Origin: Octopus sinensis
Lineage: Eukaryota
Length of the DNA stretch: 64,000 nucleotides
Direction: 5' to 3'
Assembly: GCF_006345805.1 (NCBI RefSeq)
Contig: NC_043001.1
Coordinates: 128,650,001 to 128,714,000, forward strand
The position numbers and the translations under genes are program-made. The notes under the pieces are model-generated. The model was not told the origin of the DNA. It worked only from the letters and a program-made list of their open reading frames with translations, and made no database searches. The stretch's first letter is position 1; each line of letters opens with the position of its first letter. Positions 1 through 27,548 of the stretch are shown in pieces.

Positions 1-2388
1 TGAACTCAGAACGTAGTAACAGCAGACGAAATACTGCTAAGCATTTCGCCCGATGTGCTAGTGTTTCTTCCAGTTCGCCGCTTCTTCTGGTTTCTGCCCA
101 CCTTATCCCCCTACGAAGGTTTAGTTGTCCTGAAGCTATAGTAGAACACACTTGCCCAAGGTGCCTTGTATCTGAAAGCAAATTCAGCTGTGAATAATAA
201 CTTCTAATACATTATGTTAAAAATTCCTTGGATGGAAAAGAAAAGGCAGAAAGCTACTTATGGGAGGCAAACCATGCATCTTCTGACAGACATGCTATAG
301 ATTACATTAAAACAACTTTCCCGCTTTCAGCCATCCAACTTTCCCGCTTTCATGCCTTGATCTTACCAGTGGGGTGGCATTATTTGAAAGCTACAACAAT
401 GTAAAGAAGCACATTGTGGTGTATAACAACATTCGATAGAGTGGTTGATACAGTGATTGGTGATGTACCTCAAAACAAATTCATTATCATTATCGTTTTA
501 ATGTCCACTTTTTTATGTTTGCATGGGTCAGACAGAATTTGTTGAATTAGATTTTCTATGGCCAGAGGCTTGACATCATCTTTAAGTAAAATCTCCAGAT
601 GCTCAACATCAACTTGGAGGATGCAGAAGGGCTGGTAAAGGACCACCAATGATGGGGAACACTAGTGGACCTTGATGGCGCTTCACACAATTACACCTCT
701 GGGACCCCATACCCATCAAGCAAGAACTTGAAGCAAGCATGGCCAAATGCCTTTCTTGTCACCAACCCTCACCTGTTCCTGAGCATGTTTTTACAGAAGA
801 TTAGACTTAAAGAAAACCCCTGGTTTGACAGTGACACTTGTTTACAACTATCACATGATATCAAAACAAGGGGACACATGCGCACACTCACATGGCAAAT
901 GTCTGTCAGTTATCATCTACTAAATACATTCACATGGCTTTGATCAGCCTAGGCACTTACCCAAGGTGCTGTGCAGTGGGATTTAACCTGAAACCACATG
1001 GCTGACAAGCAAACTTCTGAACTACACAGCTATAAATATTTATTTTATTTTTTTCCATCCAAGGTGTTTTTCACCCAATATATCATCAGCTATTATTTGT
1101 TAGTGAATTTGCTTCAAGATATACTTCGGAGTATATCTAAACTGGCTGACCCTCTGATTAAACTCATGCTCACCAGGTTCAAATGTAATATTTTATACTT
1201 AACCAGTGCTTATATTCACTACTCCATCGACTTGTCCACAACCTGGGGTAATACACAATTGATAGGAAGTTCAAGAGTTACTCTCAACTCTACTCAGGCC
1301 CAAGGTGGTAGTACTTGTCGAGAGCCCAGTTAGGTAATGGAAATTAGGAGCTTTGAACCTAACTTTAAATATAAAAGAAATAACTTTAGGCTGCAGATTT
1401 AATATCATTTTTTTCTATTTTAATTAATGGTTCCCATATGGCCTATATAAACTGATTCTTTTAGTTGTCTTTCAGTTTTGTCCATTTCTGTTATCTTGTT
1501 TTTGTTCCACAACAAAAAAGTTGTTTAAAGTTTCTGATTCAATCTTTTGGTCAGTCAGTTTGTATTTATTGTTGTTCAAGTGGCTAAACACTGCATCACA
1601 AACAGAAGACTAACTAATAGGAGACCATCCCTGTTATGGACAATGGAATGAGAACAATCTACCCATGTAGGTTTAAGTATTCAGTTAAAAATTCTGAGAA
1701 GATTAATGAATACAACAGCTATATGAAGCAGGTTGAAGGATACAATGGTCAAAATGTGATTATGACAACCAAGACAAGGACACAAGTTTGAATATATCAC
1801 AGTATAATACTCATTTCTTTGTTTCTATGTTTGATATATATATCATCATCATCATCATCATCATTTAACGTCCGCTTTCCATGCTAGCATGGGTTGGACG
1901 GTTCAACTGGGGTCTGTGAAGCCAGAAGGCTGCTTCAGGCCCAGTCTGATCTGGCAGTGTTTCTAGATATATATTTGTTTTTTTACTATTTTAAATATAC
2001 ATTGTTAAATTAGTCCATTGTGATCCAAAATTACATTAGGGTCAGAGACATTTTTATCCCGATATTATATGCATATGTTTTGAGGGTAGAAAGCACCCAT
2101 GAAATATGCAAACAGTATTATTCTTCTCTTCTTTTGCGGCATGAGTTGGAGAAATCCTTTGTCATCTCACCTGTGATACCAATCACCCTGAGACCTGATT
2201 TCTCCATTTTCTCTTTTCTCTTTATCAGCTGAGTAATTTCTTTGTTGTATTCAATCGGCAATGTCCTTAATACCAGTCATTGTTTAAGCTCACTTAAGCA
2301 CTTTCTTCTTTCTTTTATGCCAGTAAAGAATTGATGTGATCTATTATCCAAAATATTTAACTTGTCCTTACTAATTATCTCTTTTTAG

Positions 2389-5772: not shown

Positions 5773-6180
5773 GTAAGTGACTTCTGAATTCCTCCTCAGT
5801 TCATTTTATTGCTGTTAAATAGTTAAATACAGCATTTAGGACCAAATAGAATTTGAAAAAATAAACAAAACAAAAATGGAAACATAATGAGAAAATGAAA
5901 TTAGATAAAAAGGAAATTATTTAGATGAAATAAATATCATCTTTTACTGTCCATTTTCCATGCTGGTATGGATTGGACAGTTTGACAGGAGCTGGCAAAC
6001 CAGAAGACTGCACCAAGTTCCATTGTCTATTTTTGCATGGTTTTTAACAATAACCACATAATAACCATGTTACACATTACAGTGGACAGGGTACATTTTA
6101 CGTGGCACCAGCACCAATGAGGTCTGGATGTCCTTCCTTACATCAACCACTTTACAGAGTTGGCTAGGTACTTTTTATCT

Positions 6181-7160
6181 ACATCCCAACCGAGCTGCAG
6201 CAATTTTTGTCTGGTTCCCAAAGAAACGTGCGGTCTTGCATTATCATGTTGGAAAACAACAACCTTCCTGTTGGCCAATTCTGGATGTTTCTCTTGAATT
6301 GCTGCTTTTAACTCGTCCAGTTGTGTGCAGTATTTCTCAGAATTAATTGTCTGGTTACTTGGGAGAAGCTCATAGTACAGAATTCCTTTCCAATCCCACC
6401 AGACACAAAGCAAGACTTTTTTAGGGTGAAGACCCACTTTTGGAGTAGCTAAGGGTGGCTCATGTCACTTACTCCAGGATCACTTTCTCTGAACACTTCA
6501 GTAGATAATCCATTTCTCATCACCTGTCACAATTTGCTTGAAAAAAGGCGCGTTTTCATTCCGTTTATAAAGCGAATCACAGATGGAAATGCAATCCAAA
6601 AGGTTCTTCTCACTCAACTCATGTGGTACCCAAACATCATAGCGATTTGTGTACCCAAGCTTTACCAGGTGTTCATGAACGACGGATTTTGATAGGTTGA
6701 GGCTTTCTGCCAATTCTCGGGTTGTGCAATGTGGGTATTCTCAATTAATGACTTGATATGGTCATCATCTGTAGTGGATGGTCTGCCTGATCGCTCTTTA
6801 TCAATAAGGCTATAATCTCCAGCTTGGACCCTTATGAACCACTTCCGTACAGTTCTTTTGGATAAAGAAACATCACCGTAAACTGCGCATATTTCTTTGG
6901 TTGCTTGTGAGGTATTTTTCCCTTTATGGAAAAAGAAAAGCATCAAGTGCCGAAAACGAACTTTCTTATCTTCTATTTTAGAGGGTTACAGAATTAACAC
7001 AGGTTATAGGAACATAAACCTTCTTCCACGAAAAGATAGCTTAAACTGTGCTCTAAATAGAGGTGTAGTCAAATCCTATTTTATGGACTCAACCATGTTC
7101 TAAAATAAGTCGAAAGGTAAGCTACTATAAATCGGCACGAACTTTCTGGACGACCCAATA
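6181..7160 (-). mobile_element. 3'-truncated, frameshifted mariner (Mos1-like) transposon
   Basis: Three ORF pieces carry the HTH N-terminus (ERSGRP), IVTGDEKWIIY, LCVWWD and QHDNARPH. 5' ITR TA-TTGGGTCGTCCAGAAAGTTCGTGCCG ends at 7160. Breaks after LGWDV, so YSPDL, the third Asp and the 3' ITR are missing. Confidence 0.92.
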
Positions 7161-7320
7161 CTAAACAAAAGACAGTTTCTGTTATATATGAAATTTCATG
7201 GTTTATAATTTACTGGTGCATATTAAACATGAGTATATATTATATGCAAATAAATACAAAAAATTAAGAATGTTTACAAATTTGAAAATTTGAAATATCT
7301 TTAATTTTACTTAACTTTAG

Positions 7321-7732
7321 GTTATGTTCCTGAGAGTGAAGAGGAATGGCTCTATCTGCTTGATCAAAAAAAAATGCAGTCAGCAGAGGATGATACAAAT
7401 GCCTTCCAATCTTCTCTAATTGGTGCAGTAATGAAATGTTACAAAGACTGTGGTGTTTTTTCATTAGAAGAGTACAAGTCTCTTGAAGAAAGCCTTCATA
7501 GTACTGAACAAGACTCTGAGAACTTGAGTGAAACACACAAAGAACTAACATCACAGATATTTGTTCCTTCTCCTTTGACTTTGGATTCTGTGTATCGGTT
7601 ATTTATCCAACGTATGGGACCACAAAGAGGGATACATCTCCTGTTGGAGCACAATTGTCTTAAGCCAAGTGATTATCCATTGTCCTTTTACCAAAGCTGT
7701 CTCTTTGGCTCATTGATACAGCGACAACAGAG
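7321..7732 (+). CDS. HPS5: HPS5 exon: YVPESEEEWLYLL...FIQRMGPQRGIHLL...GSLIQRQQ(R)
   Basis: ttaactttag acceptor, AG|gtaaca donor, 412 nt, phase 1-2; contains ORF 7374-7736. Resembles human WIPETVEEW and AMGPDRAWSLL...EKRQR. Confidence 0.95.
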
Positions 7733-8899
7733 GTAACATTAATATTTTTTTAAATATTTTCAGCATCAAATTTTTTTTTTACTTCATAATATTTTTGTCC
7801 CCTCTCTTTCCCTCACTCATTGTTTTAATGCTCCTTAAACCTAAAATACCTGCTGTTAATAATTCTTATGAAGTAAATGAAATTAAAATTAAAATTTCTA
7901 AGCATTCTCTACATGTTATCATCATCATCAATTAATGTTCATTATCCATGCTGGCATGGTTCAGACCGTTTGACAGGATCCAGCAAACCACAAGGTTGCA
8001 TTATGCTCTAACATAAGCTTTAGTATGATTTTTACAGCTGGATGCCCTTCCTATTACTAACCCTCATCTGTTTTTCTAAGACAGGATCTTATATTCCCCA
8101 TGTGTTTGAAGGCCAACAATATTTTTGACAGAAGAAATGACAACTACATGTAGCTAGAGATTTTCAGAGAAATGCAAATGTAAATGTGCACATGTCTACA
8201 CACACACACACACAGCATCACCATCATCATCATTATTTAATGTCCACTTTCCATGTGGGCATGGGTTAGATGGTTTTACAGGAGTTTGTCAGCTGGAGAG
8301 TTGTCCAGGCTCCAGCTGTCTGTTTTGGCATAGTTTCTTACAGTTAGATGCCCTTCCTAACACCAACCACTTTACAGTGTGCTTTTCACCTGCATGGGTA
8401 AAATTCTGGAATCCATTTATTGGACTAAATTGTTTCAAGGCAGTGCTGGGCACTGCCTTGAAGAAATGACTGAAATGAGTAAAAGATAAAAAATGTGTGT
8501 TTGTGTGTGTGTATAAATATACGTGTGTGTATAAATAATGTGTGGCACACACACACACATTATTTATAGAGTCTACCAGCACAGTTAGGGGTACCCCAGG
8601 TTTCAAAATCCATTTCTGCAGACCTTTTGTAATGCCTATGTTTCTTATAGATCTGCCATCAATCACAAATAAGACTACCTTCTTATTTGGGATTGAAATG
8701 TAGGTATTAAATAATTGTCTACAAATATGGAATTTGAGACTTAAGACACCCCTAACTGTGCCAGTAGATCCTATTAATAACAGCACTCAGCTCTATTTGA
8801 CTATACAGAGCACTCTTCTTTCATTTCTAGCTCTCTACAGAAACTTTTAGTCAGGCCGACTGAAGCCTTGTGAGTGGATTTGGTAGACAGAAACTGAAA

Positions 8900-9308
8900 G
8901 AGCTGGCAGAGTCGTTAGAATGCCGGGCAAAATGCTTAGTGGTATTTCATCTGTCTTTACGTTCTGAGTTCAAATTCCGCCAAGGTCGACTTTACCTTTC
9001 ATCCTTTCGGGGTCGATAAATTAAGTACCAGTTACGCACTGGGGTCGATGTAATCAACTTAATCCCTTTGTCTGTCCTTGTTTGTCTTCTCTGTGTTTAG
9101 CCCCTTGTAGGTAGTAAAGAAATAGGCATTTCGTCTGTCTTTACGTTCTGAGTTCAAATTCCGCTGAGGTCGACTTTACCTTTCATCCTTTCGGGGTCGA
9201 TGAATTAAGTACCAGTTACGCACTGGGGTCGATGTAATCAACTTAATCCCTTTGTCTGTCCTTGTTTGTCCCCTCTATGTTTAGCTCCTTGTGGACAATA
9301 AAGAAATA
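8900..9308 (+). mobile_element. SINE family C with ~184-bp tandem duplication of its body
   Basis: TTCTGAGTTCAAATTCCGCC..GGTCGACTTT..GGGGTCGAT unit occurs at 8941-9124 and 9125-9308. Confidence 0.85.
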
Positions 9309-9761
9309 AGAAACTGAAAGAAGCCCATCGTGTTTTTTTTGTGTGTATGTGTGCACATGAATGTATGTATGTCTTTATGCCTGTTTGTTCCCCACCACCA
9401 CCACCACCACTTGAAAACTGTTGCTGGTGTGTTTATGTCCTTGTAACTTACTGGTTTGACAAAAGTGACCGATAAATACCACACTTAAAAAAATTAAAAT
9501 TCTGGAATCCATTCATCAAAGCAGTACCCCAGTATGGCTGCAATCTAATGACTGAAACAAGTGTGTGTGTGTGGAAATATATATATGTATTATATGTATA
9601 ATTTTACCCTTACGGGCTATCTTTTACTGGAAAGCAATACTTTCGTATTGCGTTACTATTTTCATTGAAACTTCTTCACTGTTCTCGTTCTGTTAACGTT
9701 TTGGCGTTCAGACAAGTGTACTGACATAGATGTGGCAACATTTGAAATTTTGTCTAGGTAT

Positions 9762-9832
9762 ATGCAGCTGATGAGGACAAATCAAATCTACGTTGTCAAA
9801 CGTATTTGAAGAGTCTGAAACCGGTCCTGCAT
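9762..9832 (+). ncRNA. Type I minimal hammerhead ribozyme motif (Penelope-type)
   Basis: ATGCAG-CTGATGA-GGAC..GTCT-GAAA-CCGG-TC-CTGCAT: 6-bp stem I, full core, long stem II, palindromic stem III ACCGGT, GUC site. Confidence 0.8.
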
Positions 9833-10075
9833 TATCTGTTTCTAGGTTTTTCATTTTTCAGATGTTCTTCCTAGAGGTAAGACAAATTTTTTTCATGTTT
9901 GTTGCACACACACGTCTTTGCTAGTATATACACAGTTAAGCTATACAATAGCGTCGTATTTATTACGATCGCTATTTTCCAGTAAATATCGGTACTTCGT
10001 TGTACCATTTATTTACTTTTATTATATATATATATATATTTAATTTTTGAATTCATTATATCTGTTCTTTGCCAG

Positions 10076-10151
10076 ATTTATAATTCACAACATGTTGGAG
10101 AAAATTGATGAATATTTTTGGTCAAAGAAACCAGCTTCTATGGCTCCAGCA
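10076..10151 (+). CDS. HPS5: HPS5 exon: FIIHNMLEKIDEYFWSKKPASMAPA
   Basis: ttctttgccag acceptor, gtaagt donor, 76 nt, phase 2-0. Resembles the human C-terminus LIQSMLEKCDRFLWSQQA. Confidence 0.93.
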
Positions 10152-10737
10152 GTAAGTAGAGAATTTTCTTTCTCCCAAATCTACATTATTGGTTTTGTAA
10201 CTCCACATCATTCCCTGATTCAGCAGGCCTATGATCATGACCAAGAGCCTTCCAACCTTGACGTCACCACTTTCTTTTACTTTTCAGATATATTGTATCC
10301 CAAAACTACGTACAATTTCCTAAGTGATCTCTTTTTGAAGGTAGTTGATCGTAATTTGAGGGACACTGGCTATTATTTCTAGCATTTCACAGCAACTTAA
10401 TGAAACATATTCAAAGTTGAATAACCCTTCCCCCACCAATACACTCATATACGCACACACACACACACTCTTTCTCTTTCTCTCTCTCTCTCTCTCTACT
10501 CATTTGTATATACAGGTATACTGACTCATTTTTCTTATCTGCACGCATGCACTCCCACACAGACACACATACATATGTACATGTACACCTTATCTATTGT
10601 CAAGGTCTACACATATAAACACTATAATACTTATATGTATCACATTTTCAAATAAAAATTTTGCCAATATTCTTTCAGAAATCCTTGTGACATTATTTCT
10701 TTCTTCTGTAACATTTTTTTATCTCCCTCCTCCACAG

Positions 10738-10806
10738 ATTTATTTTGCTGTAGAAGAAGAGAAGAACACAAACTACTTGGAACCATCTGTCTCTACGCAA
10801 GAACTG
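10738..10806 (+). CDS. HPS5: HPS5 exon (C-terminal extension): IYFAVEEEKNTNYLEPSVSTQEL
   Basis: Polypyrimidine tract plus ccacag, CTG|gtaagt, 69 nt, phase 0-0, open frame. Confidence 0.85.
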
Positions 10807-11631
10807 GTAAGTGCTGACTGAATAATCATTTTATTATTGGAGTTTGTACTTGTGCAAGCAATTGTCTTGGTCTTAGACTTTGGGTTGAAAATGAATCAAT
10901 TACATCATAAAAAGTTAATTTTAAGTCATTTAAAAATGCACAGAAAATCTGTTAAATTATTTTTTGTTAACTGACTTCTTGTGATGTCAAAATATTTGTT
11001 ACACATCTGCAGCTTGGTCACTGATGCAGTTTCACAGTGTCAGAGGAAAAATGGAAGTGTATCAGTCATCAGGTTACACAGTTTGTTCATTTAACAAATG
11101 AATGATGTAGAGACACAGGCATGGCTGTGTGGTGTTTAAGAAGTTCACTTTGCAACTATGTGGTTTTGGGTGCAGCACCTCCTAAAGCTTCAGGTTGACC
11201 AATGTCTTGTGAGTAGACTTGTTAGGTGGAAACTGTGAGAAAATCTGTTGTGTGTGTTTTGACAGAAGAAATGACAACTACATGTAGCTAGAGATTATCA
11301 GAGAAATGCAAATGTAAATGCGCGCACATCTACACACGCGCACACACACACACACACACTCTCTTTCTCTCTCTCTCTACTCACATGTGTAAATGCGTGC
11401 ACATCTACACACACACACTCTCTTTCTCTCTCTCTCTACTCACATGTGTAAATGCGTGCACATCTACACACACACACTCTCTTTCTCTCTCTTTCATACA
11501 TACACACAAATGTGTATATATATATATATATAAATATATATATATATGCTTCCTTGTTGGCTTGTCTAGCAAAATTGTATTCCAATTTGGTGTGTTTAAT
11601 TCCATACTTTTTTACTTTTATTCTCTTTTAG

Positions 11632-11714
11632 CTAAAACAGTTGCAGCCATTGAATGGGCAAAGATTTGCTGAAGAAAAGGAGTACCACTGGGGTAGTTCT
11701 ATAGATATCTTTAC
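11632..11714 (+). CDS. HPS5: HPS5 exon: LKQLQPLNGQRFAEEKEYHWGSSIDIF(T)
   Basis: ttctcttttag acceptor (in-frame alternative AGs end at 11640 and 11646), AC|gtaagt donor, 83 nt, phase 0-2. Confidence 0.85.
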
Positions 11715-11904
11715 GTAAGTTTCAGTAAAGTATTTTCTGTTCCTTTTTTTTTTTTTTTTGGTAGAAATACAGTAACAACTGTGTTGCCCCTTTAGCATTT
11801 AAAATGGCCATATCCAGCCGGAATATTCTCCGTTTTATGTTCAAATTAAGCAGATTCAGCCTTTCCCACTACCCTACAGTATCATTCTAAGTATAAAACA
11901 ATCA

Positions 11905-12069
11905 GGCGCAGGAGTGGCTGTGTGGTAAGTAGCTTGCTAACCAACCACATGGCTCCGGGTTCAGTCCCACTGCGTGGCACCTTGGGCAAGTGTCTTCTGC
12001 TATAGCCCCGGGCCGACTAATGCCTTGTGAGTGGATTTGGTAGACGGAAACTGAAAGAAGCCTGTCGTA

Positions 12070-12112
<43 letters not shown>

Positions 12113-12322
12113 ATGTGTGTTTGTGTGTCTGTGTTTGTCCCCCTAGCATTGCTTGACAACCGATGCTGGTGTGTTTACATCCCCGTCACCTAGCGGTTCG
12201 GCAAAAGAGACCGATAGAATAAGTACTGGGCTTACATAGAATAAGTCCCAGGGTCGATTTGCTCGACTAAAGGCAGTGCTCCAGCATGACCGCAGTCAAA
12301 TGACTGAAACAAGTAAAAGAGT
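11905..12322 (+). mobile_element. tRNA-headed SINE family A, full length
   Basis: GGCGCAGGAGTGGCTGTGTGGTAAG..GGGTTCAGTCCC head, central (TA)n, GACTGAAACAAGTAAAAGAG tail. Confidence 0.92.
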
Positions 12323-12669
12323 ATACATGTCAGCCGTGTATGTTGATCTCTTGCTATCAATGAAAGGGTGCTGTGACCAGCGGTGTGAAATGGACGCCCA
12401 AAGGACTGGTCAGTCAAGGTGATCAAGGTGATATATAGATCATAATCTAATGTTCACTTTTCAAAGCTTACATGGGTCAGATGGAATTTGTTGAGGCAGA
12501 TGTTCTTCAGCAAGGTGCCCTGATGCCCTTCTGTTGCTAATACTCCCAGCAAGATAATACTTCTTCATACTGAGACATGAGTTTTGCAAACGTCTGGAAG
12601 TAAAACACTTCGCTTGTATGACAATGATGTTCATTTACAACCATCATATGATGTTAAGACACACATACA

Positions 12670-12905
12670 TGTTAGTTAGTTAGTTAGTTAGTTAATTTGG
12701 CTCAAAAGCAAATAGCAAGGCCATGTAGGGGGACATGGAGTTAAGTACAGGGTGGTGTTCATGTAAAGAATTCAGGCCACTTGAGGTCGTCGTCGGCATC
12801 TTCACCATCTCGTCTGGCAGCTTGTTCCACGGATCCGCAACCCGGACGGAGAAAGCTCCTCTCCTTCGATTGAGATGAAATCGTCGCAGGTAGATACACA
12901 CAATG
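12670..12905 (-). mobile_element. CR1-clade LINE 3' end
   Basis: RRGAFSVRVADPWNKLPDEMV motif followed by a (TAAC)n tail. Confidence 0.75.
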
Positions 12906-13421
12906 GGTTTTTGTTTTCAATTTCTGTCACCCAGATACATTCACAAGGCTTTGATCAACCTGGGGCTATGTAGTAGAAGGTGCCGCAAAACTATGTGGTT
13001 GGGAAACAAATTTCGTCAATCACACTTGCACCCATTGCTTTATTTTTTACACATTTTTCTGTATTTTGCCTTTCCCCATTTTTTTCTTGTGCATGTGTGT
13101 ATATAGACGTGTATATGAACCTTTTTTGTGCTTGCATGTGTGCGAGTATGTATATATTTTTTGGCGAATGTGGGCACGCATGTGTGTGTTTCAAGTGAGT
13201 GTAGATGAGCATATGCATATAGGCACATGTACGTGGGTGTGCAGGCGCACATGTGTATGTATGGACATGTGCACTTACATGATTGCTATGAGCATTTTTA
13301 TTCCTTTACCTTTTACTGCCTCCTTTTATTAAGCAGTCATTCTAATAACTCTTTTGTTCTAATACTAGTCAATCACATAGTAATTTCCCTTTAATGGTCA
13401 TTTTTATAGCATTTTTTGATG

Positions 13422-13491
13422 GCCTGATAACTGAAGAGATGCCAGTGCGGGTTTCCACCTCGACATCCGAAACTCGGAGTTTTATCATGGC
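13422..13491 (+). ncRNA. Degenerate type I minimal hammerhead motif
   Basis: GCC-TGATAA-CTGAAGA-GATG..CATC-C-GAAA-CTCGGAG-TT-TTATCA-T-GGC: stems I and III pair; stem II has one extra C; site is GUU. Confidence 0.6.
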
Positions 13492-13603
13492 TACCGAATA
13501 ATTGCCACATATTATATTTACAGATAAATTCCTCTATTTACATAATATCGAGGTCTCTTTCATTCTTTTGTTGTCTTATCATTACTATCAATATATATAT
13601 ATT

Positions 13604-14022
13604 GGCGCAGGAGTGGCTGTGTGGTAAGTAGCTTGCTAACCAACCACATGGTTCCGGGTTCAGTCCCATTGCGTGGCATCTTGGGCAGTGTCTTCTGCTA
13701 TAGCCTCGGGCCGACCAAAGCCTTGTGAGTGGATTTGGTAGACGGAAACTGAAAGAAGCCAGTCGTATATATGTATATATATATGTATATATGTGTGAGT
13801 ATATGTTTGTGTGTCTGTGTTTGTCCCTCTAGCATTGCTTGACAACCGATGCTGGTGTGTTTATGTCCCCGTCACTTAGCGGTTCGGCAAAAGTGACCTA
13901 TAGAATAAGTACTGGGCTTACAAAGAATAAGTCCCGGGGTCGAGTTGCTCGACTAAAGGCGGTGCTCCAGCATGGCCGCAGTCACATGACTGAAACAAGT
14001 AAAAGAGTAAAAGAGTAAAGAG
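13604..14022 (+). mobile_element. SINE family A
   Basis: Near-identical to 11905-12322. Confidence 0.92.
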
Positions 14023-14219
14023 TATATATATATATCCAGTTTGGCCATACCCTTTAAGCTGAGAGATGTAAATGAGTATATGGGAATCAAAACTATAAAA
14101 CTGAGAATTAATGTAATGCTGAATGAAAGAATGCTTTCATTTTAATGTGAGATTTTTTTCTGCTAAAGCTTGCAGAAGATTTGGCTACTGCTATTGTATG
14201 TAATTCGCGTGTGTGTATA

Positions 14220-14630
14220 GGCACAGGAGTGGCTGTGTGGTAAGTAGCTTGTTTACCAACCACATGATTCCGGGTTCAGTCCCACTGCGTGGCACCTTGG
14301 GCGAGTGTCTTCTACTATAGCCTCGGGCCGACCAAAGCCTTGTGAGTGGATTTGGCAGACGGAAACTGAAAGAAGCCTGTCGTATATATGTATATATATA
14401 TATATGTATGTGCGTGTATGTTTGTGTGTCTGTGTTTGTCCCCCTAGCATTGCTTGACAACCGATGCTGGTGTGTTTATGTTCCCGTCACTTAGCGGTTC
14501 GGCAAAAGTGACCGATAGAATAAGTACTGGGCTTACAAAAGAATAAGTCCCGGGGTCGAGTTGCTCGATTAAAGTCGGTGCTCCAGCATGGCCGCAGTCA
14601 AATGACTGAAACAAGTAAAAGAGAAAAGAG
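14220..14630 (+). mobile_element. SINE family A
   Basis: Near-identical to 11905-12322. Confidence 0.92.
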
Positions 14631-15349
14631 ATATATACATATATTTATATTGAGTATACAACAGATGAACCATTTCTCTTGGACGAAAATCTTTGGTGAT
14701 AATTATTTCGTCCGTGGTGGATTGATAATTCATTGTAACTCACCATCGTAATTGCAGTGATTGGCTTTTTGGAAATAACTTTAAACATTATTCACCAAAC
14801 AAAAAGCAATAACCCACATTCCCAATAAATAAATAAATATTCCAAGGGAAACAACTCTTAATAATTTTTCCCGAGTAATCCCCCTTTATAAATTCTATAT
14901 TCGCAGATTTATCTTTATTTTCAAGACGGTGAGCATGCAGAATAGTTACTACGTCGGACAAAATGCTTTGTCGTACTTTTTCCACTTTTGCGTTCTGAAT
15001 TCAAATTCCGCCGAGGTCCACTTTATCTTTCATTCTCTCGGGGTCAATAAATATCATTCGAGTATTAGGGTCAATGTCATCGGCTAGTCTCCTGTTCCCA
15101 GAATTTCAGGCATGTGTCTACAGTAGAAAAAATCAACTCCACTTTCAAGGGTTGCGACCTGACAAAACGCCATACAATATTTCTTCAGACTCCTTATATC
15201 ATGAGTTCAAATCCCTTCAAGGCCAACTTTGCCTTTCATCTCTCCAGGATTGATCAGTCAAGTATTGGGCTCAATACGTAAGAATTGTTGGCCTTGTGCT
15301 TAAAACAGAAATTATTATGCCTACTTTTCAATTAATTAATAAAGATTTA

Positions 15350-15760
15350 GGACCTTTTCGGTTTGAACAGAAGTTTTTTCTAGCGGTGTCATATGAAATT
15401 GTCACCCATAATTACAACCCTAGTATCAATCTATTGCATTTCAATCTGTTTTAGGGTTAGGGGTGGGGGGAAGAGTATCTCTTTTTCTTCAGAAATGTAA
15501 ATAAACCCAATCTGTTTCTTAAACAAGGGACATATTCATACGGCACAGAATGTTTTTAACCACAATACACGTCATTGATTGGTTGAAATTGCAGAAATTG
15601 AAGAAAAAAAACAACAAATATCTTACAAACTATAGAATTTTCTCAATAAAGTCAAGAGAAAAAGATGTTTTATAAACACATTCTACCAGTATACGAAGTT
15701 TAAAATTTTTTAGTTACCTAGAAATTATGTTAAAAACTTCCGTTCAAACCGAAAAGATCC
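15350..15760. mobile_element. Non-autonomous DNA transposon (MITE), 411 bp
   Basis: 28-bp TIRs with 2 mismatches (GGACCTTTTCGGTTTGAACAGAAGTTTT / AAAACTTCCGTTCAAACCGAAAAGATCC); 8-bp TSD AAGATTTA at 15342-15349 and 15761-15768. Confidence 0.9.
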
Positions 15761-16328
15761 AAGATTTATACCATCGGCACAAAGCCAGCAATTTTGAGAT
15801 AAGAGCTTTATTCTATTACAACAACCCCATTACTTGACTGGGTACTTTATTTTAATGACTCCAAAAGCATGAAGGACTAAGTTGACTAAGTGGGATTTGA
15901 ACACAGAACTTGAAAAGTAGGAAGAAATACCACAAAGCATTTTTTCCAACTCTATAACAATTCTGCTAACTCACTGCCCGTTTCAATTAATGATGGCTTA
16001 GAATAACCTACTCCAAACTTATTTTGCTTTGGGTACCTGGCGAGTTTCAGATGCCAAAAGCTTAATTTTGATCTGCACTTGACCCAGGGTAGCAACTCAG
16101 TCAAAGAGATGAGCTGTAGAAAGATATGTCACATGAGTAGCATTGTCATCCAGGAATCTCTGCAGGAGTATCAGCTGAAAGTGTTCTTGTGCATCAATAA
16201 TCATGTTTTTGCAGCTGATTAATGTTCAGGCTTTTTGATTCTCTGTAAATGTTGAAATTAATTAAAAAAAAAAAAAAAAAAAGTAAACAAATAATGCATT
16301 TTAAATTGTTGTTTCTAAATTATATTCA

Positions 16329-16728
16329 ACTAGCAGTATCGCCCGGCGTTGCTCGGGTTTGTGAGGGAAATAACTATATAAGCATTTTTAGAGAGTTATA
16401 GCCAAAAAATAGCAAAAACATGCATTAAAACTGGAAAAAAAATGATGGTAAATTTTTTTTTAAATCGTTGACTCATTGTAGACATTTTTAGAGAGTTACT
16501 TCCCTTATATAATAGCGAAAAAATGCATTAAAATGGAAAAAAATGATGGTAAATTTTTTTTTAAATCATAGACTCATCATAGACGCGCGCTAATACCCAG
16601 AAGGGCTGGATATGAATCACGACTATAAGATACCCGGTTTTGGTTAAACTGCACCGCAAAATGTGGGAGTAGTTAGGAATCTAAATCGTAGGAGACAGAC
16701 ACACAACTTGACTTTTATATATAAAGAT
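16329..16728 (+). mobile_element. Helentron/HINE (DINE-1/Lep1-like) non-autonomous element
   Basis: 5' ACTAGCAGTATCGCCCGGCGTTGCTCGGG with subterminal hairpin; 3' AGACAGACACAC..TTTTATATATAAAGAT; internal ~60-bp direct repeat. Confidence 0.7.
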
Positions 16729-17054
16729 TATGTTTATTTACTGCTTTTCACAAACATTTCGGTGTCAGAATATAGTTTTGAGCATGTATTGTAGCTTAAC
16801 CATATTCTTGAATTTCATTGTGCTGTCTACTATACTTCATGGCTAAGTTATATTGCTGATCAAAGTGTCCAGCTTTCATTGTCTACTGAATATAGAATGA
16901 CCAGTTTATAATTTTTACCTCTCGAGTTATCTGAATCAACTAGAGATTGAGCTTGGCACCACATTAACCAAATTCTATTGACTATTACTTTCATTGTCTC
17001 TCTCTCTATTTGTTGTTTCATTCCTGTTCATCTTCAAGTGTTATATTACCTGAC

Positions 17055-17390
17055 CATCGCATGGCTCAGTGGTTAGAGCATTGAGCTTACGATCGTGAGG
17101 TTGTGAGCTCAAATCCCGGACCGGGCTGTGTGTTGTGTTCTTGAGCAAGGCACTTTATTTCACGTTGCTCCAGTTCACTCAACTGTAGAAATGAGTTGCG
17201 ACATCACAGGTGCCAAGCTGTATCGGCCTTTGTCTTTCCCTTGGATAACACTGGTGGCGTGGAGAGGGGAGGCTGGTATGCATGGGCGACTGCTGGTCTT
17301 CCATAAACAACCTTGCCCGGACTTGTGTCTAGGAGGGTAACTTTCTAGGTGCAATCCCATGGTCATTCATGACCAAAGGGGGTCTTTTAC
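17055..17390 (+). mobile_element. tRNA-headed SINE, different subfamily
   Basis: TGGCTCAGTGGTTAGAGC A box; 3' part also present reversed at ~58470-58640. Confidence 0.8.
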
Positions 17391-17792
17391 AGATTCTATG
17401 TTAAACTTGTGTGAAATTGTAGCATGGTGTTCTATGTTAATTCCTTCTGTTGCACAGTTTTACTATTTTGTTGGATAGAATTATCATAGAAAAAGACCAA
17501 GGACAAAGGAAGCTATATTGCTATTTTCTCAGACAGAGCAGAGTTACTTTGCTCAAATTCCTTTTCCTATGAAACTCAGCACTACAAACCAACTGATCAG
17601 TCACCAGATTCAACAATCCTATCACCAATTATGCTCACAACAATGAAATACACCATCAATGGTACACATGTATGACTATGTGATCCTAGCCATTGACATT
17701 TAAGAAACAAGCAAAACATAATACAGTGACAGGATGCCTTGCTTTATGTTCCCAACCTGTGATGGAATTATAGGGGTGCTATTGTTACTTAT

Positions 17793-18054
17793 GTGGAGGC
17801 ACGTGGCTTAGTAGGTTAGGGTGTCAGCATCATGATTGTAAGATTGTGGTTTCGATTCCTGGACCGGGCGACGCGTTGTGTTCTTGAGCATGACACTTCA
17901 TTTCACGTTGCTCCAGTCCACTCAGCTGGCAAAAATGAGTAATGCTGCAATGGACTGGCGTCCCGTCCAGCTGGGGAACACATATGCCATAGAAATCGGG
18001 AAACCGGGCCCATGAGCCTGGCTAGGCTTTAAAAGGGCGCATTTATTTTTACAT
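17793..18054 (+). mobile_element. tRNA-headed SINE family B with 13-bp TSD
   Basis: GTGGAGGCACGTGGCTTAG..GGTTTCGATTCC head; TSD TATTGTTACTTAT at 17780-17792 and 18055-18067. Confidence 0.9.
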
Positions 18055-18793
18055 TATTGTTACTTATACTATGTCACGAGTCCCAAACTTGATGGAGCCC
18101 AATAGCTCTCCAGGCTGCTTTCTTCCAAAGAGAGAGAGAGGAATTGATTTCATTACTGGACTAATATCTTATTTACTGATCTTGAAATGATGGAAGGTGA
18201 AGTAGCTTGGCAGGTTTTGAACTCAGAATGCAGAGAGCCAGAATAAATACTGCAAAACATTCTATCAAGGTGTATGAATTTACTGTAGATTGGTTTACAG
18301 TGGTATCAAGTTTCTGTGGCTTTCTTCTATTGTTGTTATTGGTTGTGTTGCTATTATTGTAACGGTTGCTAGGTTTTATTTTGTTTGAGCTTCAAACACA
18401 GACATTTGTCAGATTTCACATCAGATGTTGCACAAAGATTTCTCTTTCTCCTTTTATATATTTCTATCATTTCATCACTGCTGTTTTTTTTTTAAGGGCA
18501 TTGTACCTATGCATGTGTTGTGTCATTGTGTCAAGTGTGTAACATGTATATAGAAAATCTGTAGAGATGACCTTATCACATAACTCTTACAGTAGAAAGA
18601 ATCAATTCCACTTTCAAGGGTGGCGACCTGACAAAACGCCATACAATATTTCTTCAGACTCTTTATATCACTAGTTCAAATCCCTTCAAGGCCAACTTTG
18701 CCTTTCACCTCTCCAAGATTGACCAGTCAAGTATTGGGCTCAATATATATACATACATACATGGGGTTATATATATATATATATATATATATA

Positions 18794-19180
18794 GGTGTAG
18801 GAGTGGCTGTGTGGTAAGTAGCTTGCTTACCAACCACATGGTTCCAAGTTCGGTCCCACTGCGTGGCACCTTGGGCTAGTGTCTTCTACTATTGCCTCAG
18901 GCCGACCAAAGCCTTGTGAGTGGATTTGGTAGACGGAAACTGAAAGAAGCCCGTCGTATATATATGTGTGTGTGTGTGTCTGTGTTTATCCCCACAACAT
19001 TGCTTGACAACTAATGCTGGTGTGTTTATGTCCCCGTAACTTAGCGGTTCGGCAAAACTGACTGATAGAATAAGTACTCGGCTTACAAAGAATAAGTCCT
19101 AGGGTCGATTTGCTCGACTAAAGGCTGTGCTCCAGCATGGCCACAGTCAAATGACTGAAGCAAGTAAAAGAGTAAAGAGT
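18794..19180 (+). mobile_element. SINE family A
   Basis: Same head, body and tail. Confidence 0.9.
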
Positions 19181-21577
19181 ATATATGGATATATATGTAG
19201 GTGAACAAACAAAAGAAATTAGCACTCAGCATATTTGGTTGAAGGTACTTATATTCTTAATAAGTCTAACTCAGCTTCACATGACTTAAAGTTTCATGCG
19301 TATAGGATGAATCCATCTCATCAGATAATAGGAGTAGAATAGGAGTTTTAAGAGGAATTCAAGATGGTTTTTAGGTGTTTAGACCTCTATTGATCAGCTC
19401 AGATAATGTGGTATTAATGCTGTCAAAATTATACCAGTTATTTGCTTTATGTTTGTCCCATGTGTTTGGACAGAACATGGGCAGGACACTGCTACCACTT
19501 TTGCAGTAGGCTGTGGTGTAATGTTTCCAACAACCTTAAGTCCTTGTATTGAGAAATGCACATTGTTGGGTGGGATTTTGGCGCAAGTTAGTCGCTCAGC
19601 CATCATTCTGTTCATATGAACAATGGCAACAGCCTGTATGTGGGAGTAAGCAAAAGGTAAATTCATTGCCGGATCACAATCAACAATGTCCTTGATGTAT
19701 ACACACGAGGCAGGGTGGTCATGACTGGAATCCTTTACAACAACAGCAGTGTATGTTCTTTTATTCTTGTATTTGTTTCGGTAATGAGGCCACGATAATG
19801 CTGAGGCACTACTTTGAAGGTTTTACTCAAACAGCTCAGTCCCCAGTATCTATTTTCTTAAGGCTCTTACTTATTCTACCAGGCTCTATTTACCGAACCA
19901 TGACCCATACAGGGACGTAAACCAACACTGATTGTCAAGCAATTTTGTGGGTGAACAAACACAAACACACACACGTTCCCAACATGTGATGGAATTATAG
20001 GGGTGCTATTGTTACTTATGTGGAGGCATGTGGCTTAGTAGGTTAGGGTGTCAGCATCATGATCGTAAGATTGTGGTTTTGATTCATGGATCAGGCGACG
20101 CATTGTGTTCTTGAGCAAGACACTTCATCTGAGCTTTTGTTGATGTTGCATGAAGGATTTCTTTCAGTTTCCACCTACCAAATCTACTCACAAAGCTTTG
20201 ATTGGTCTGGGACTATGGTAAAAGGCACTTGCCCAAGGTGCTGCACAGTGGGTCTGAACTCGGAACCATGTGGTTGGGAAGCAAACTTCTTACCACACAG
20301 CCACAGCCGCATCTACAGTGTATACTTCAGCTTGAAATGATTTATTTCCAATCCACACTTCTTTGTGATGCATATGCATAGGAGTGACACTAAACTGGGG
20401 AAAAAAACCATAAGACATTAAGGCTATAAAACTGATTTAAAGTAGAGAGCTATGAAAGAAGTATGTATAACTGTAAGCAGAACATAAAAGAACACGGTTA
20501 TATTAGAGGTGTATATTCTAAAAGAGAGTAGCATAAAACCAAATGTTAATAGGAAAGGTAATAACCATCAGAATGTGGCCGTTGCCAGCACCGCCCCGAC
20601 TGGCGTCTGTGCTGGTGGCACGAAAAAAACACCATCCAATTGTGGCCGTTTGCCAACCTCGTCTAGCACCTGTGCAGGTGTCACGTAAAAAACACCCACT
20701 ACACTCATGGAGTTGTTGGCGTTAGGAAGGGCATCCAGCTGTAGAAACACTGCCAGATCAGACTGGGCCTGGCGCAGCCTTCAGGCTTCCCAGACCCCAG
20801 TTGAACCATCCAACCCATGCTAGCATGGAAAACGGACGTAAGAAGAGTAGAAGTAAAAGATTATTAAAAATACAATAAATAGAAAGAGAAAGGTAGTGAG
20901 GAACAACACACACACAGGGAGATTTCTCTCAAGTTATCTGATTTGACAGGTGAGTGAGCTTGGCACAAAGTTAACCAGATTCTTTTGTCTATTACTTTCA
21001 TTGTCTCTCTCTGTATTTGTTGTTTCACTCAAGTTGATTCAGATAACTTGAAAGGTAAAAGTTATAAACAGGCTACTCTGCACATATGTATGCATATGTA
21101 TATGTATACATATCTTTTACTTTTTTTATCTTTTACTTGTTTGAGTCAGACTGCAGCCATGCTGGGGTACCACCTTGAAGAATTTTTAACCTGGTACTTA
21201 TTCTACTAGTGTCTTCTTAACTGAACTGCTATGTCACAGGGACATAAATGTACCCACACTGGTTGTCAAGCAGTGGTGGAGACACACACGTACACACATA
21301 CATACATATTTCTGTCTACCAAATCCACTCTCAAGGCTTTGGTCTACCCAAGGCTATAGTAGAAGACACTTGCCCAAGGTGTCATGCAGTGGGACTGAAC
21401 CCGGAACAACGTGGTTGGGAAGTTCTTACCACACAGCCACACCTGCACCTCCACACAGCCTGTTTACCAATTAATCCTCATATACAAATCCCACTGTCAA
21501 TGCCAGATATGCTATATTTATGCTAGCATGTTCACACTACTATATATAATGTGTATATGCATGTAAATATGCATTCT

Positions 21578-21624
<47 letters not shown>

Positions 21625-22809
21625 TTAACTACCTTTCTCTTTCTCTCCCTTTCACTCTCCCATCTTCTAACTCTTATATATAGATATCTTTCAGGTTGAA
21701 CTGATAGTGTTTAGAGATTAAAAGTAAAAATAAATTAATATTTCAGATTTGGAAATATTTTCCCTTTAGGCAAATTAGTTTTAATGGAATAATTAACTTC
21801 AGAATAATAAAAATTCTTTTCTTTTTTTTTTTTTTTTTTGCCCAGATCTAATGAAGAGGTGATGGAGTGATTGTGGGGATAAATTATAATGAAGATACTT
21901 TCATTACACATTTCATAAATTTATGTGTGCGTGTAATTTTGTGTATTCATAACTATCACATAAGATATATATTTTCAGTATGCACTGAACCTGTGTGTGT
22001 GTGTGTAATACATTTGTATTAATAGTTTAACTTAGAATTCCATTACTATGAGTTTCACAAACGCCAAAAGCATTTCTGATTACGTGTATACAATTTCACT
22101 GAGTAAGGTAAATCTGAGTCAGTGTTAATCCAAATATTAACCTCCACAACATATGTTAGGTACTCTTTTCTTTTGTGTATACACTTATCTGTGTGTATAT
22201 GCATGTGTGTGTGTGAATATATATATATTTCTTTACTACCCACAAGGGGCTAAACATAGAGGGGACAAACAAGGACAGACAAAGGGATTAAGTCGATTTC
22301 ATTGACCCCAGTGCGAAATATATATATTATATATGTGAATATATATATATTTCCTAGGCTTGACGCTTTGCTGTGTTCAAGAAGACTCATACTCCACAGA
22401 TGAAGTTTTAAGGCCACTTACCCTGGTGAAGAAGAGTTGCCTGCAATAGTCCTATACTGGTGCCATATAAAAAGTTCTTGTGCCAGTGCCATGTAAAAGC
22501 GCTCCTGTGGTTTCACATGAAAACACCTGGTGCACTCTGTAAAGTGATTGGCATTAGGAAGGGGATCCAGTTGTTGAAAACTAGCCAAATCAGACTTGGA
22601 GCTTGGTGCAGCTCCCTGGCTTGCCAGTTCTGATCAAACCATCCATGGACAACAGATATTAAAAGGTGATGATGATGAGATGACAATTCATCTTGTGATG
22701 CATGTGGACAGATCATCAGTGATGTTTCTTGGGGTAATTAGGTGTTTCAACGCCAGACGCCCTCACCCAAGTAACCTGGCCAGGCTTGATCAAATCATAA
22801 CACTGCCCC

Positions 22810-23190
22810 TTCTAGGGCTTGCACCTCCTGATCAACTGCTGCCTTGAAGCAGCTTCTTGTGCCTCCACAGCCTACTTGATGGCCTTCATCCTATTGTCCC
22901 TTTTAATGCCAAGTATGCAATAAACACCTTAGCGGGACTGGCCTGCAAAACCTTCTACATCATACCTCGATGAGACCCCACCTTGCTTGCCAGCTATTGC
23001 ACTGGCATAATTCCACTAGCTTAGTATATTTCCTCCTCTTGCTCTTGTGGTCTTCCCAGGGAATGGGGAATTCCAAGAGAACCACTTGTTTGGATGCTTC
23101 TGACATCAGCTCCATATCCAGCCTAAGTGATGTTTAGGTAACAGTTTCTGGAAACTTCAGCTGCTTCCCTGGCTTCATTACTTGCTCTGA
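22810..23190 (-). mobile_element. HERO-like RLE non-LTR retrotransposon, C-terminal fragment
   Basis: Minus translation SEASKQVVLLEFPIPWED..KRRKYTKLVELC..WQAR..IEV*CR resembles the ELTVPWE...PIEVGCRGF restriction-like endonuclease motifs. Confidence 0.75.
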
Positions 23191-23194
23191 CTAA

Positions 23195-23906: not shown

Positions 23907-23936
<30 letters not shown>
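23195..23936 (+). mobile_element. 5'-truncated CR1/L2-group LINE
   Basis: VRPHLEFASPVWNPY..LETVQ and HFFMLRVAEAWNKLP motifs; 3' UTR; (ATT)n tail. Confidence 0.88.

Positions 23937-23937
<1 letters not shown>

Positions 23938-25443: not shown

Positions 25444-25493
<50 letters not shown>

Positions 25494-27514: not shown

Positions 27515-27548
<34 letters not shown>

What the first reader, a model, noticed from the sequence alone, without database searches (positions are those of the whole stretch)
9762..9832. Near-intact minimal hammerhead ribozyme in sense orientation inside an HPS5 intron
Seen: stem I ATGCAG/CTGCAT, core CTGATGA (9768-9774), stem II GGAC/GTCT extended by TCAAAT/ATTTGA and ACGTT/AACGT, GAAA (9817-9820), loop-less palindromic stem III ACCGGT, and GUC with predicted cleavage after 9826. 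The only defect is G10.1-U11.1, explainable by CpG deamination. Established: minimal type I hammerheads with palindromic stem III mark Penelope-like elements and cleave best as dimers. Inference: it lies on the HPS5 pre-mRNA strand ~240 nt upstream of an exon, so it could cut nascent transcripts or be a co-opted regulatory element. The long, fully paired stem II may indicate recent origin or selection.
Basis: partly seen in the sequence, partly recalled or inferred. Interest (0 to 1): 0.75.

Follow-up and report, generated by a model that had tools for sequence, protein, structure and literature searches.

The report
Young solo hammerhead retroelement in octopus intron
The hammerhead ribozyme motif is really there, in the sense strand of an Octopus sinensis HPS5 intron, but it belongs to a roughly 400-450 base mobile-element insertion that O. 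vulgaris shares and O. bimaculoides lacks, and that shows no sign of being used by the host, so it is an ordinary relic and not a co-opted regulator.

Summary
Window 9762-9832 (+) carries a complete type I hammerhead: a 6-bp helix I, the CUGAUGA core, a 4-bp helix II (G10.1·U11.1) with a long hairpin extension, GAAA, the ACCGGU palindrome and C17. It is the only such motif in the window (0.005 expected). Its best Rfam match is Hammerhead_HH9, at 27.2 bits against a gathering score of 52.

The window is Octopus sinensis, and the motif lies in the sense strand of the HPS5 intron 7734-10075, 243 nt upstream of exon 10076-10151.

The co-option idea is not supported:
- The hammerhead sits in a self-paired unit of about 400-450 nt, inserted into a TA microsatellite at the tail of a SINE.
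- O. vulgaris has the unit (97.9% identical). O. bimaculoides lacks it precisely, leaving an empty site. The Argonauta hians HPS5 locus has no hammerhead.
- O. sinensis and O. vulgaris differ by 1.7% in the unit and 1.5-1.8% in the flanking intron, which is the neutral rate.
- Helix III is one base pair plus a palindromic tetraloop. Motifs of this type cleave poorly alone and well as dimers, and only one copy is present.

Best reading: a solitary monomer of a hammerhead-bearing non-autonomous retroelement (non-LTR retrozyme or Penelope-derived). This is a new member of a known kind. Genome-wide copy number could not be checked.

The parts
9762..9767 (+). Helix I, 5' strand (AUGCAG)
   Evidence: Pairs with 9827-9832. 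O. vulgaris has U at 9765, which turns a G-C pair into G·U.
9768..9774 (+). Catalytic core C3-A9 (CUGAUGA)
   Evidence: Exact consensus. Aligned to the core of the Rfam HH9 model.
9775..9816 (+). Helix II. The basal 4 bp are GGAC/GUCU, with G10.1·U11.1 (9775·9816). Then come a 3+3 nt internal loop and an extended hairpin (9782-9809).
   Evidence: MFE fold. The Rfam alignment shows a 31-nt insertion in loop 2. O. vulgaris has U at 9791, giving a G·U pair.
9817..9819 (+). Core G12-A13-A14
9820..9825 (+). Helix III: A15.1-U16.1 closing a palindromic CCGG tetraloop (ACCGGU). This is the dimerisation palindrome.
   Evidence: Sequence. It has the same architecture as the salamander HHR_Amex1 type described in PMC7229834. 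A double-hammerhead dimer evaluates to -41.3 kcal/mol, against -39.4 for two monomers.
9826..9826 (+). C17. The predicted self-cleavage site lies between 9826 and 9827.
   Evidence: GUC triplet at 9824-9826. Cleavage itself was not tested.
9827..9832 (+). Helix I, 3' strand (CUGCAU)
9756..9837 (+). Hammerhead plus the distal extension of helix I: AGGUA 9756-9760 pairs with UAUCU 9833-9837, and U9761 is bulged six base pairs from the core.
   Evidence: MFE fold of 9600-10010.
9606..10006 (+). Core of the inserted, self-paired unit that carries the hammerhead (36% G+C). Long-range pairing joins 9623-9760 to 9833-9986.
   Evidence: MFE -118.5 kcal/mol, z -6.5. My own control gave z -5.5. There is no other copy in the window or in the L002-L004 loci.
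9584..10030 (+). Full stretch present in O. sinensis and O. vulgaris but absent from the O. bimaculoides orthologous site. It comprises the insertion plus TA-repeat material, and its ends are blurred by the microsatellite.
   Evidence: Three-species alignment A1; BLAST coordinates.
9574..9605 (.). Left TA-rich flank (target microsatellite)
10007..10042 (.). Right TA-rich flank (target microsatellite)
9310..9573 (+). SINE copy ending in a (TG)n tail, whose TA-rich end received the insertion. Part of it (9340-9605) is also present in O. bimaculoides.
   Evidence: Many copies in the window. 9340-9605 aligns to L003 79954-80220.
7734..10075 (+). HPS5 intron that contains the element (donor GTAACA, acceptor TTTGCCAG)
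   Evidence: Exon mapping with the O. sinensis and Argonauta HPS5 proteins.
7321..7733 (+). Upstream HPS5 exon (start approximate)
   Evidence: Matches residues 1896-2037 of Argonauta HPS5 (P0001): 70% identity by phmmer and 63% by tblastn. Weak Pfam TPR_HPS5 hit.
10076..10151 (+). Downstream HPS5 exon (RFIIHNMLEKIDEYFWSKKPASMAPA)
   Evidence: Matches the O. sinensis HPS5 protein sequence. 86% DNA identity to the Argonauta exon.

Best explanation
The motif is a genuine canonical type I hammerhead ribozyme. It was carried into the intron by a small non-coding mobile element of about 400-450 nt. The element is most likely a solitary monomer of a metazoan non-LTR retrozyme, that is, a non-autonomous derivative of a Penelope-like element's terminal repeat.

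The element inserted into a TA microsatellite at the tail of a SINE, about 50-70 nt upstream of the 3' splice site of an HPS5 intron. This happened in the common ancestor of O. sinensis and O. vulgaris, after the split from O. bimaculoides. I infer that integration used a Penelope-type reverse transcriptase and GIY-YIG endonuclease supplied in trans, because such enzymes prefer AT-rich and (TA)n targets.

In its family the hammerhead would process multimeric transcripts into unit-length RNAs by forming double hammerheads between neighbouring copies. At this locus there is only one copy. Its helix III is one base pair plus a CCGG tetraloop, its 10.1-11.1 pair is G·U, and its most stable monomer fold ties up core bases C3-G5. 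It is therefore transcribed passively within the HPS5 pre-mRNA and removed with the intron, with little or no self-cleavage and no host function.

Shown: the motif, its gene context, its presence or absence across species, and its neutral divergence. Inferred: the family assignment, the integration machinery, and the lack of cleavage.
For: - Motif and significance.
- The window is O. sinensis (100% identity to L002).
- HPS5 identity of the gene: the Argonauta homologue carries Pfam Beta-prop_HPS5 (E 1.6e-105) and TPR_HPS5, and the exons map to the + strand.
- Insertion polymorphism: O. vulgaris has the unit at 97.9% identity. In O. bimaculoides, window 9605 aligns to L003 80220 and window 10023 to L003 80196, so the flanks meet inside a TA-rich stretch.
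- No hammerhead in 63.6 kb of the Argonauta HPS5 locus at Rfam E <= 1, and no CTGATGA in its orthologous intron.
- Neutral divergence: 7/408 in the unit and 2/71 in the hammerhead, against 27/1826 and 34/1900 in the upstream and downstream flanks.
- Properties of the unit match published non-LTR retrozymes: 150-450 bp, under 45% G+C, highly self-paired, canonical type I hammerhead (PMC7229834). Here G+C is 0.36 and the fold z-score is -5.5 to -6.5.
- Dispersed monomer derivatives, about 43% of them intronic in Xenopus, are described in bioRxiv 10.64898/2026.07.22.740005.
- Penelope-like elements prefer (TA)n or AT-rich targets (PMC8557442; PMC11167929).
- Dimer dependence of this helix III type: 6% cleavage in 1 h as a monomer and efficient cleavage as a dimer (PMC7229834).
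- Dimer energetics.
- The monomer MFE pairs CUG 9768-9770 with CGG 9822-9824.
Against: - No second copy of the unit was found in about 290 kb of non-orthologous octopod sequence. No eukaryotic genome collection could be searched, so membership of a multi-copy family is inferred, not shown.
- No tandem arrangement, no Penelope-like ORF nearby and no recognisable target-site duplication.
- The Rfam score is below gathering.
- The fold z-score is not unique: 4 of 28 control segments of the window reach z <= -4 (one of these overlaps the unit), and the minus strand folds almost as well, z -6.2.
- The O. sinensis / O. vulgaris divergence is so low that the test for selection has little power.
Confidence: 0.7

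Rival explanations
1. A hammerhead-like motif arose by chance inside an unrelated mobile element, for example a Stowaway-like MITE or foldback element mobilised by a Tc1/mariner transposase that inserts at TA. Under this reading the motif has no ribozyme history.
For: - The element was inserted into a TA-rich site.
- The unit is self-complementary on both strands, z -6.5 and -6.2.
- A mariner/Mos1-type transposase remnant lies at 6141-6985 in the same window.
- There are no sister copies and no tandem array.
- The Rfam score is below gathering.
Against: - The match goes beyond the core bases required by the descriptor. Helix I (UGCAG/CUGCA) and GAAACC...GGUC align with identical letters to the HH9 consensus.
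- Helix I is 6 bp and helix II 4 bp, with a bulge six pairs from the core. These are the canonical metazoan dimensions (PMC4209133).
- The string GAAACCGGTC also occurs in the full text of the newt satellite 2 paper (that text could not be read).
- The two arms are only 52% identical as a DNA inverted repeat, the one perfect 11-mer is internal, and no terminal inverted repeats are seen.
Confidence: 0.15
2. The hammerhead has been co-opted by the host as an intronic ribozyme. It cuts nascent HPS5 pre-mRNA or modulates its splicing, in the manner proposed for the amniote HH9 and HH10 ribozymes.
For: - Sense orientation, 243 nt upstream of an exon and close to the 3' splice site.
- The core is intact.
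- The best Rfam match is the intronic HH9 family.
- Both O. sinensis / O. vulgaris substitutions in the hammerhead keep pairing, G-C to G·U.
Against: - Absent from O. bimaculoides, and no hammerhead in the Argonauta HPS5 locus, so HPS5 works without it.
- Divergence equals the neutral intron rate.
- Helix III is too weak for monomeric cleavage and no partner copy lies in the transcript.
- The 10.1-11.1 pair is G·U.
- Retrozyme copies are depleted from introns relative to intergenic DNA, which suggests selection against genic insertion rather than for it.
- Two substitutions are too few to show covariation.
Confidence: 0.05
3. The locus is an active retrozyme source copy that releases a circular RNA from the HPS5 intron.
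For: The unit size, low G+C and self-paired fold match retrozyme circular RNAs.
Against: Release of a unit-length RNA needs two cleavage sites. Only one hammerhead exists in the intron and in the whole window, and there is no direct repeat of the unit.
Confidence: 0.03

Closest known systems
Canonical type I hammerheads of metazoan non-LTR retrozymes, especially the salamander satellite-2 / HHR_Amex1 type (PMC7229834)
   Same: - Type I topology, with a 6-bp helix I and a 4-bp basal helix II.
- Helix III reduced to one base pair closing a palindromic tetraloop. Motifs of this type cleave poorly alone and well as dimers.
- The carrier unit is a few hundred nt long, has low G+C and is highly self-paired.
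- Dispersed monomer copies occur in introns.
   Different: - A single unit instead of a tandem array.
- Helix II has a long extra hairpin in place of the short loop 2 that makes tertiary contacts.
- G10.1·U11.1 replaces G-C.
- Family copy number and circular-RNA expression in Octopus are unknown.
Minimal hammerheads in the terminal repeats of Penelope-like elements (PMC4209133)
   Same: - Type I, dimer-dependent, and associated with retroelements that insert into AT-rich or (TA)n DNA.
- Widespread in invertebrate genomes.
   Different: - The Penelope minimal form has no helix III or loop 3, an extra nucleotide between A9 and G10.1, and a longer helix II. The octopus motif has none of these.
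- No reverse transcriptase / GIY-YIG ORF accompanies the octopus motif.
Hammerhead_HH9 (Rfam RF02275), the conserved intronic hammerhead of amniotes
   Same: - Best-scoring Rfam family.
- Nearly identical helix I (UGCAG/CUGCA) and GAAACC...GGUC.
- Sense strand of an intron.
   Different: - HH9 has a 3-bp helix III with a loop, a short loop 2, and deep conservation at an orthologous site.
- The octopus motif scores 27.2 bits against a gathering score of 52, lacks a stable helix III, and is a young lineage-specific insertion.

Membership tests
Hammerhead ribozyme, type I | Conserved core: C3 U4 G5 A6 N7 G8 A9, G12 A13 A14, A15.1-U16.1, H17 | tested here: met
   CUGAUGA 9768-9774, GAA 9817-9819, A9820/U9825, C9826.
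Hammerhead ribozyme, type I | Helices I and II flank the core, with helix I open-ended | tested here: met
   Helix I is 6 bp (9762-9767/9827-9832). Helix II is 4 bp plus an extension (9775-9816).
Hammerhead ribozyme, type I | A helix III able to form | tested here: inconclusive
   Only A-U closing a CCGG tetraloop. A 6-bp helix III forms only between two copies; the dimer evaluates to -41.3 kcal/mol against -39.4 for two monomers. Only one copy is present.
Hammerhead ribozyme, type I | G10.1-C11.1 base pair | tested here: not met
   G9775·U9816 wobble, in both O. sinensis and O. vulgaris.
Hammerhead ribozyme, type I | Score at or above the Rfam gathering threshold of a hammerhead model | tested here: not met
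   HH9 scores 27.2 bits against 52. Nothing at gathering.
Hammerhead ribozyme, type I | Site-specific self-cleavage | not testable with these tools
   Needs in vitro transcription of monomer and dimer constructs.
Metazoan non-LTR retrozyme | Canonical type I hammerhead in a unit of 150-450 bp with G+C below 45% | tested here: met
   The unit is about 400-450 nt with G+C 0.36. Definition from PMC7229834.
Metazoan non-LTR retrozyme | Head-to-tail tandem repeats (two or more units) | tested here: not met
   One unit only, with no direct repeat of it. It would have to be a monomer derivative, as described.
Metazoan non-LTR retrozyme | Highly self-paired unit | tested here: inconclusive
   z is -5.5 to -6.5, but 4 of 28 control segments reach z <= -4 (one overlaps the unit) and the minus strand gives z -6.2.
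Metazoan non-LTR retrozyme | Multi-copy family expressed as linear and circular RNA | not testable with these tools
   No Octopus genome or transcriptome collection could be searched. Indirect attempts failed.
Penelope-like element | ORF with reverse transcriptase and GIY-YIG endonuclease between pseudo-LTRs | tested here: not met
   No long reading frame runs through the roughly 415-nt unit. By eye, the reverse-transcriptase fragments elsewhere in the window have LINE-type motifs; they were not scanned.
Penelope-like element | Minimal hammerhead: no helix III and an extra base between A9 and G10.1 | tested here: not met
   The ACCGGU helix III is present and there is no extra base. Definition from PMC4209133.
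Penelope-like element | Insertion into AT-rich or (TA)n DNA | tested here: met
   The empty site in O. bimaculoides is a TA-rich stretch. Target preference from PMC8557442 and PMC11167929.
Conserved intronic hammerhead (HH9/HH10 kind) | Conservation at the orthologous intron across distant species | tested here: not met
   Absent from O. bimaculoides, and no hammerhead anywhere in the Argonauta HPS5 locus.
Conserved intronic hammerhead (HH9/HH10 kind) | Sense orientation within an intron | tested here: met
   The + strand carries both the motif and HPS5.

The most novel reading that the evidence does not exclude
The solo intronic hammerhead is cut in vivo after all. It does not act alone. It forms a double hammerhead in trans with abundant transcripts of sister copies: in a double hammerhead both helix I and helix III are intermolecular, so any RNA with the same helix I and ACCGGU sequences could serve as partner. 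This would give O. sinensis and O. vulgaris a lineage-specific drain on HPS5 pre-mRNA.

Alternatively, the element's strong internal splice-site look-alikes (9847-9861 and 9877-9882) create a poison micro-exon.
Probability: 0.04. Interest if true: 0.6.

Novelty: new member of a known kind. Interest (0 to 1): 0.2.

Why it matters
It matters little for HPS5 biology. Its value is as a clean, datable example of a hammerhead-bearing element caught as a single insertion, with the empty site preserved in a sister species. The example shows insertion into a TA microsatellite, which fits the proposed mobilisation of animal retrozymes by Penelope-like machinery. It also flags that cephalopod genomes carry the canonical, amphibian-like form of the ribozyme. 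The empty-site comparison is a quick way to separate co-opted intronic ribozymes from relics.

Tried and rejected
- Protein search with the 120-aa exon ORF found nothing. HPS5 identity came instead from the exhaustive representative search and Pfam on its top hit.
- Pfam on concatenated putative exons gave no hit. The single exon gave only a weak TPR_HPS5 hit (E 0.017).
- I looked for sister copies of the unit through gene calls on public assemblies, using a concatenated six-frame translation of 9605-10012. There were no hits at E <= 10.
- A metagenome scan for the pattern GCAGCTGATGAG-N(12-42)-GAAACCGGTCCTGC gave 0 matches.
- A relaxed descriptor found two further hammerhead-like motifs with palindromic helix III: L003 (O. 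bimaculoides) core at 2055 on the + strand, and L001 (Argonauta) core at 13832 on the - strand. About 0.02 are expected per 64 kb. No Rfam hammerhead model matched either motif, even at E <= 10 locally. I therefore do not count them as evidence for a family.
- A recent inverted duplication or long-TIR foldback origin is rejected, because the arms are only 52% identical.
- An 'empty site' could not be defined in Argonauta, because its orthologous intron is unalignable apart from the exon edge.
- The full text of the newt satellite 2 paper could not be read to compare sequences.

Full report
**Observation.** The sequence at 9762-9832 (+) reads AUGCAG-CUGAUGA-GGAC...GUCU-GAAA-CCGG-U-C-CUGCAU. That gives a 6-bp helix I, the full hammerhead core, and a 4-bp basal helix II whose first pair is G9775·U9816. 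Helix II is extended by an 11-bp interrupted hairpin. G12-A14 follow, then A15.1 and U16.1 around a palindromic CCGG, then C17 at 9826. A descriptor scan of both strands of the window finds only this hit. A strict descriptor is expected 0.005 times per dinucleotide-shuffled window.

Rfam reports nothing at gathering thresholds. A local scan gives Hammerhead_HH9 at 27.2 bits, E 6.5e-05 for 301 nt, against a gathering score of 52. Identical letters run through helix I and GAAACC...GGUC, and the penalties come from a 31-nt insertion in loop 2 and a deleted loop 3.

The motif is the canonical metazoan type I form with a weak palindromic helix III. It is not the 'minimal' Penelope form, which lacks helix III and has an extra base after A9 (PMC4209133).

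**Organism and gene.**
- The exon-like ORF 7305-7733 matches a 2160-aa protein of Argonauta hians at 70% identity.
- That protein carries Pfam Beta-prop_HPS5 (E 1.6e-105) and TPR_HPS5.
- Its Octopus orthologues are named Hermansky-Pudlak syndrome 5 protein homologues.
- Window 7300-10900 is 100% identical to the O. sinensis HPS5 locus L002 (GCA_006345805.1, CM016863.1). By offset, window base 1 corresponds to about position 128,650,001 of that record.
- The last nine HPS5 exons lie on the + strand.
- The hammerhead is in the intron 7734-10075, and the next exon is 10076-10151.

**What surrounds the motif.** The region upstream, 8900-9562, is made of SINE copies that recur throughout the window. 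The region 9600-10000 has no other copy in the window. The hammerhead sits inside a stretch whose halves pair with each other (9623-9760 with 9833-9986). The fold has an MFE of -118.5 kcal/mol and z = -6.5.

This supports the retrozyme reading but does not settle it:
- The minus strand folds nearly as well, z -6.2.
- 4 of 28 control segments of the window reach z <= -4. One of the four overlaps the unit.
- As a DNA inverted repeat the arms are only 52% identical.

The unit is bounded on both sides by TA-rich microsatellite.

**Cross-species test.** I fetched the HPS5 loci of O. sinensis (L002), O. bimaculoides (L003), O. vulgaris (L004) and Argonauta hians (L001).
- O. vulgaris has the unit at 97.9% identity.
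- In O. bimaculoides the flanks are conserved, but window 9605 and window 10023 map to overlapping positions (L003 80220 and 80196). The alignment shows the two flanks meeting in GAAATATATAAAAATATATATTTAAT. This is an empty site.
- The roughly 447 bases 9584-10030 are therefore an insertion into a TA microsatellite at the tail of a SINE. The ends are blurred by TA repeats.
- Argonauta has no hammerhead anywhere in 63.6 kb of its HPS5 locus, and its orthologous intron is otherwise unalignable.

The insertion is thus younger than the O. bimaculoides / O. sinensis split. A precise deletion in O. bimaculoides is the less parsimonious alternative.

**Selection.** Between O. sinensis and O. vulgaris the unit differs at 7 of 408 aligned bases (1.7%) and the hammerhead at 2 of 71. 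The flanking intron differs at 1.5-1.8%. Both hammerhead differences (9765 and 9791) are C/T changes that switch a G-C pair to G·U, but two sites carry no statistical weight. Nothing indicates constraint, though the test has little power at this divergence. U11.1 is shared by both species. T9816 is followed by G9817, so a CpG deamination is plausible but cannot be dated.

**Mechanism.** According to the literature read here:
- Most canonical type I hammerheads in animal genomes belong to non-LTR retrozymes. These are tandem units of 150-450 bp with low G+C, expressed as highly self-paired linear and circular RNAs (PMC7229834).
- Salamander motifs with a one-base-pair helix III capped by a palindromic tetraloop cleave about 6% in an hour as monomers and efficiently as dimers.
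- Retrozymes are related to the terminal repeats of Penelope-like elements, and they leave dispersed monomer copies, many of them in introns (bioRxiv 10.64898/2026.07.22.740005).
- Penelope-like elements prefer (TA)n or AT-rich targets.

The octopus unit fits all of these except the tandem arrangement.

Energetically, a double hammerhead of two copies (-41.3 kcal/mol) is about as good as the best predicted dimer (-41.8) and slightly better than two monomers (-39.4). The monomer's best fold pairs C3-G5 with the CGG of the palindrome. With one copy in the pre-mRNA, I infer little or no self-cleavage.

**Comparison and verdict.** The closest known relatives are:
- the salamander-type retrozyme hammerhead, which shares the helix III architecture;
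- the Penelope minimal hammerheads, which share the biology but differ in motif details;
- HH9, which is the best Rfam match and shares the intronic sense setting, but is deeply conserved and has a real helix III.

This locus is a new, unremarkable member of a known kind. The empty site in a sister species and the neutral divergence argue against co-option independently of that test.

Noticed in passing
window 9847-9882: Inside the inserted unit lie a strong 3' splice-site look-alike (TTTTTCATTTTTCAG|ATG, boundary 9861/9862) and a strong 5' splice-site look-alike (GAG|GTAAGA, boundary 9876/9877). Together they would define a 15-nt micro-exon, ATGTTCTTCCTAGAG. In the incoming reading phase of HPS5 this micro-exon contains an in-frame TAG. 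There is no evidence that it is used.
   Followed up: partly
window 8941-9124 and 9125-9308: A tandem duplication of a 184-bp SINE-like repeat, 93% identical between the two copies. Together with 8901-9340 it is absent from the O. bimaculoides orthologous intron, so it is a second lineage-specific change in the same intron.
   Followed up: partly
window 6141-6985 (- strand): Remnant of a mariner/Mos1-type DNA transposon: Pfam Transposase_1 (E 7.9e-25) and HTH_48 (E 1.4e-17), split over several frames.
   Followed up: partly
window 35325-37129 and 45263-45598 (- strand), 23142-23405 (+): Fragments of non-LTR (LINE-type) reverse transcriptase reading frames, with motifs such as NYRGISL, F.DLEK.FDSV and YADD. 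I recognised them by eye in six-frame translations and did not scan them against Pfam.
   Followed up: no
window 53471-56403: An AT-rich satellite with a 23-bp period (also 46 and 69 bp), consensus TTTTCAAAAATTTTTGGGGAAAA, in about 38 copies of the 46-bp unit. It is followed by 20-bp and 341-bp repeats. It coincides with the low G+C (0.26) and strong GC skew seen in the composition profile.
   Followed up: partly
L003 (O. bimaculoides) about 2051-2106 (+); L001 (Argonauta) core at 13832 (-): Two further hammerhead-like motifs with palindromic helix III (ACCGGU and ACACGUGU) turned up under a relaxed descriptor. About 0.02 are expected per 64 kb. No Rfam hammerhead model matches them even at E <= 10. 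They could be decayed relics or chance.
   Followed up: partly
L001 4246-61447: Several tRNA-like Rfam hits (25-39 bits; five of the six reach the tRNA gathering score of 29) are scattered through the Argonauta HPS5 locus. They are most likely heads of tRNA-derived SINEs, not tRNA genes. The O. sinensis window gave no such hit at gathering.
   Followed up: no
HPS5 protein, residues encoded by window 11632-27906: Cephalopod HPS5 is about 2160 aa, nearly twice the length I recall for vertebrate HPS5. It ends in a Cys/His-rich RING-like segment (CPCCH...C.H..H..C...C..C). Some molluscan orthologues are named 'RING-type domain-containing protein'.
   Followed up: no
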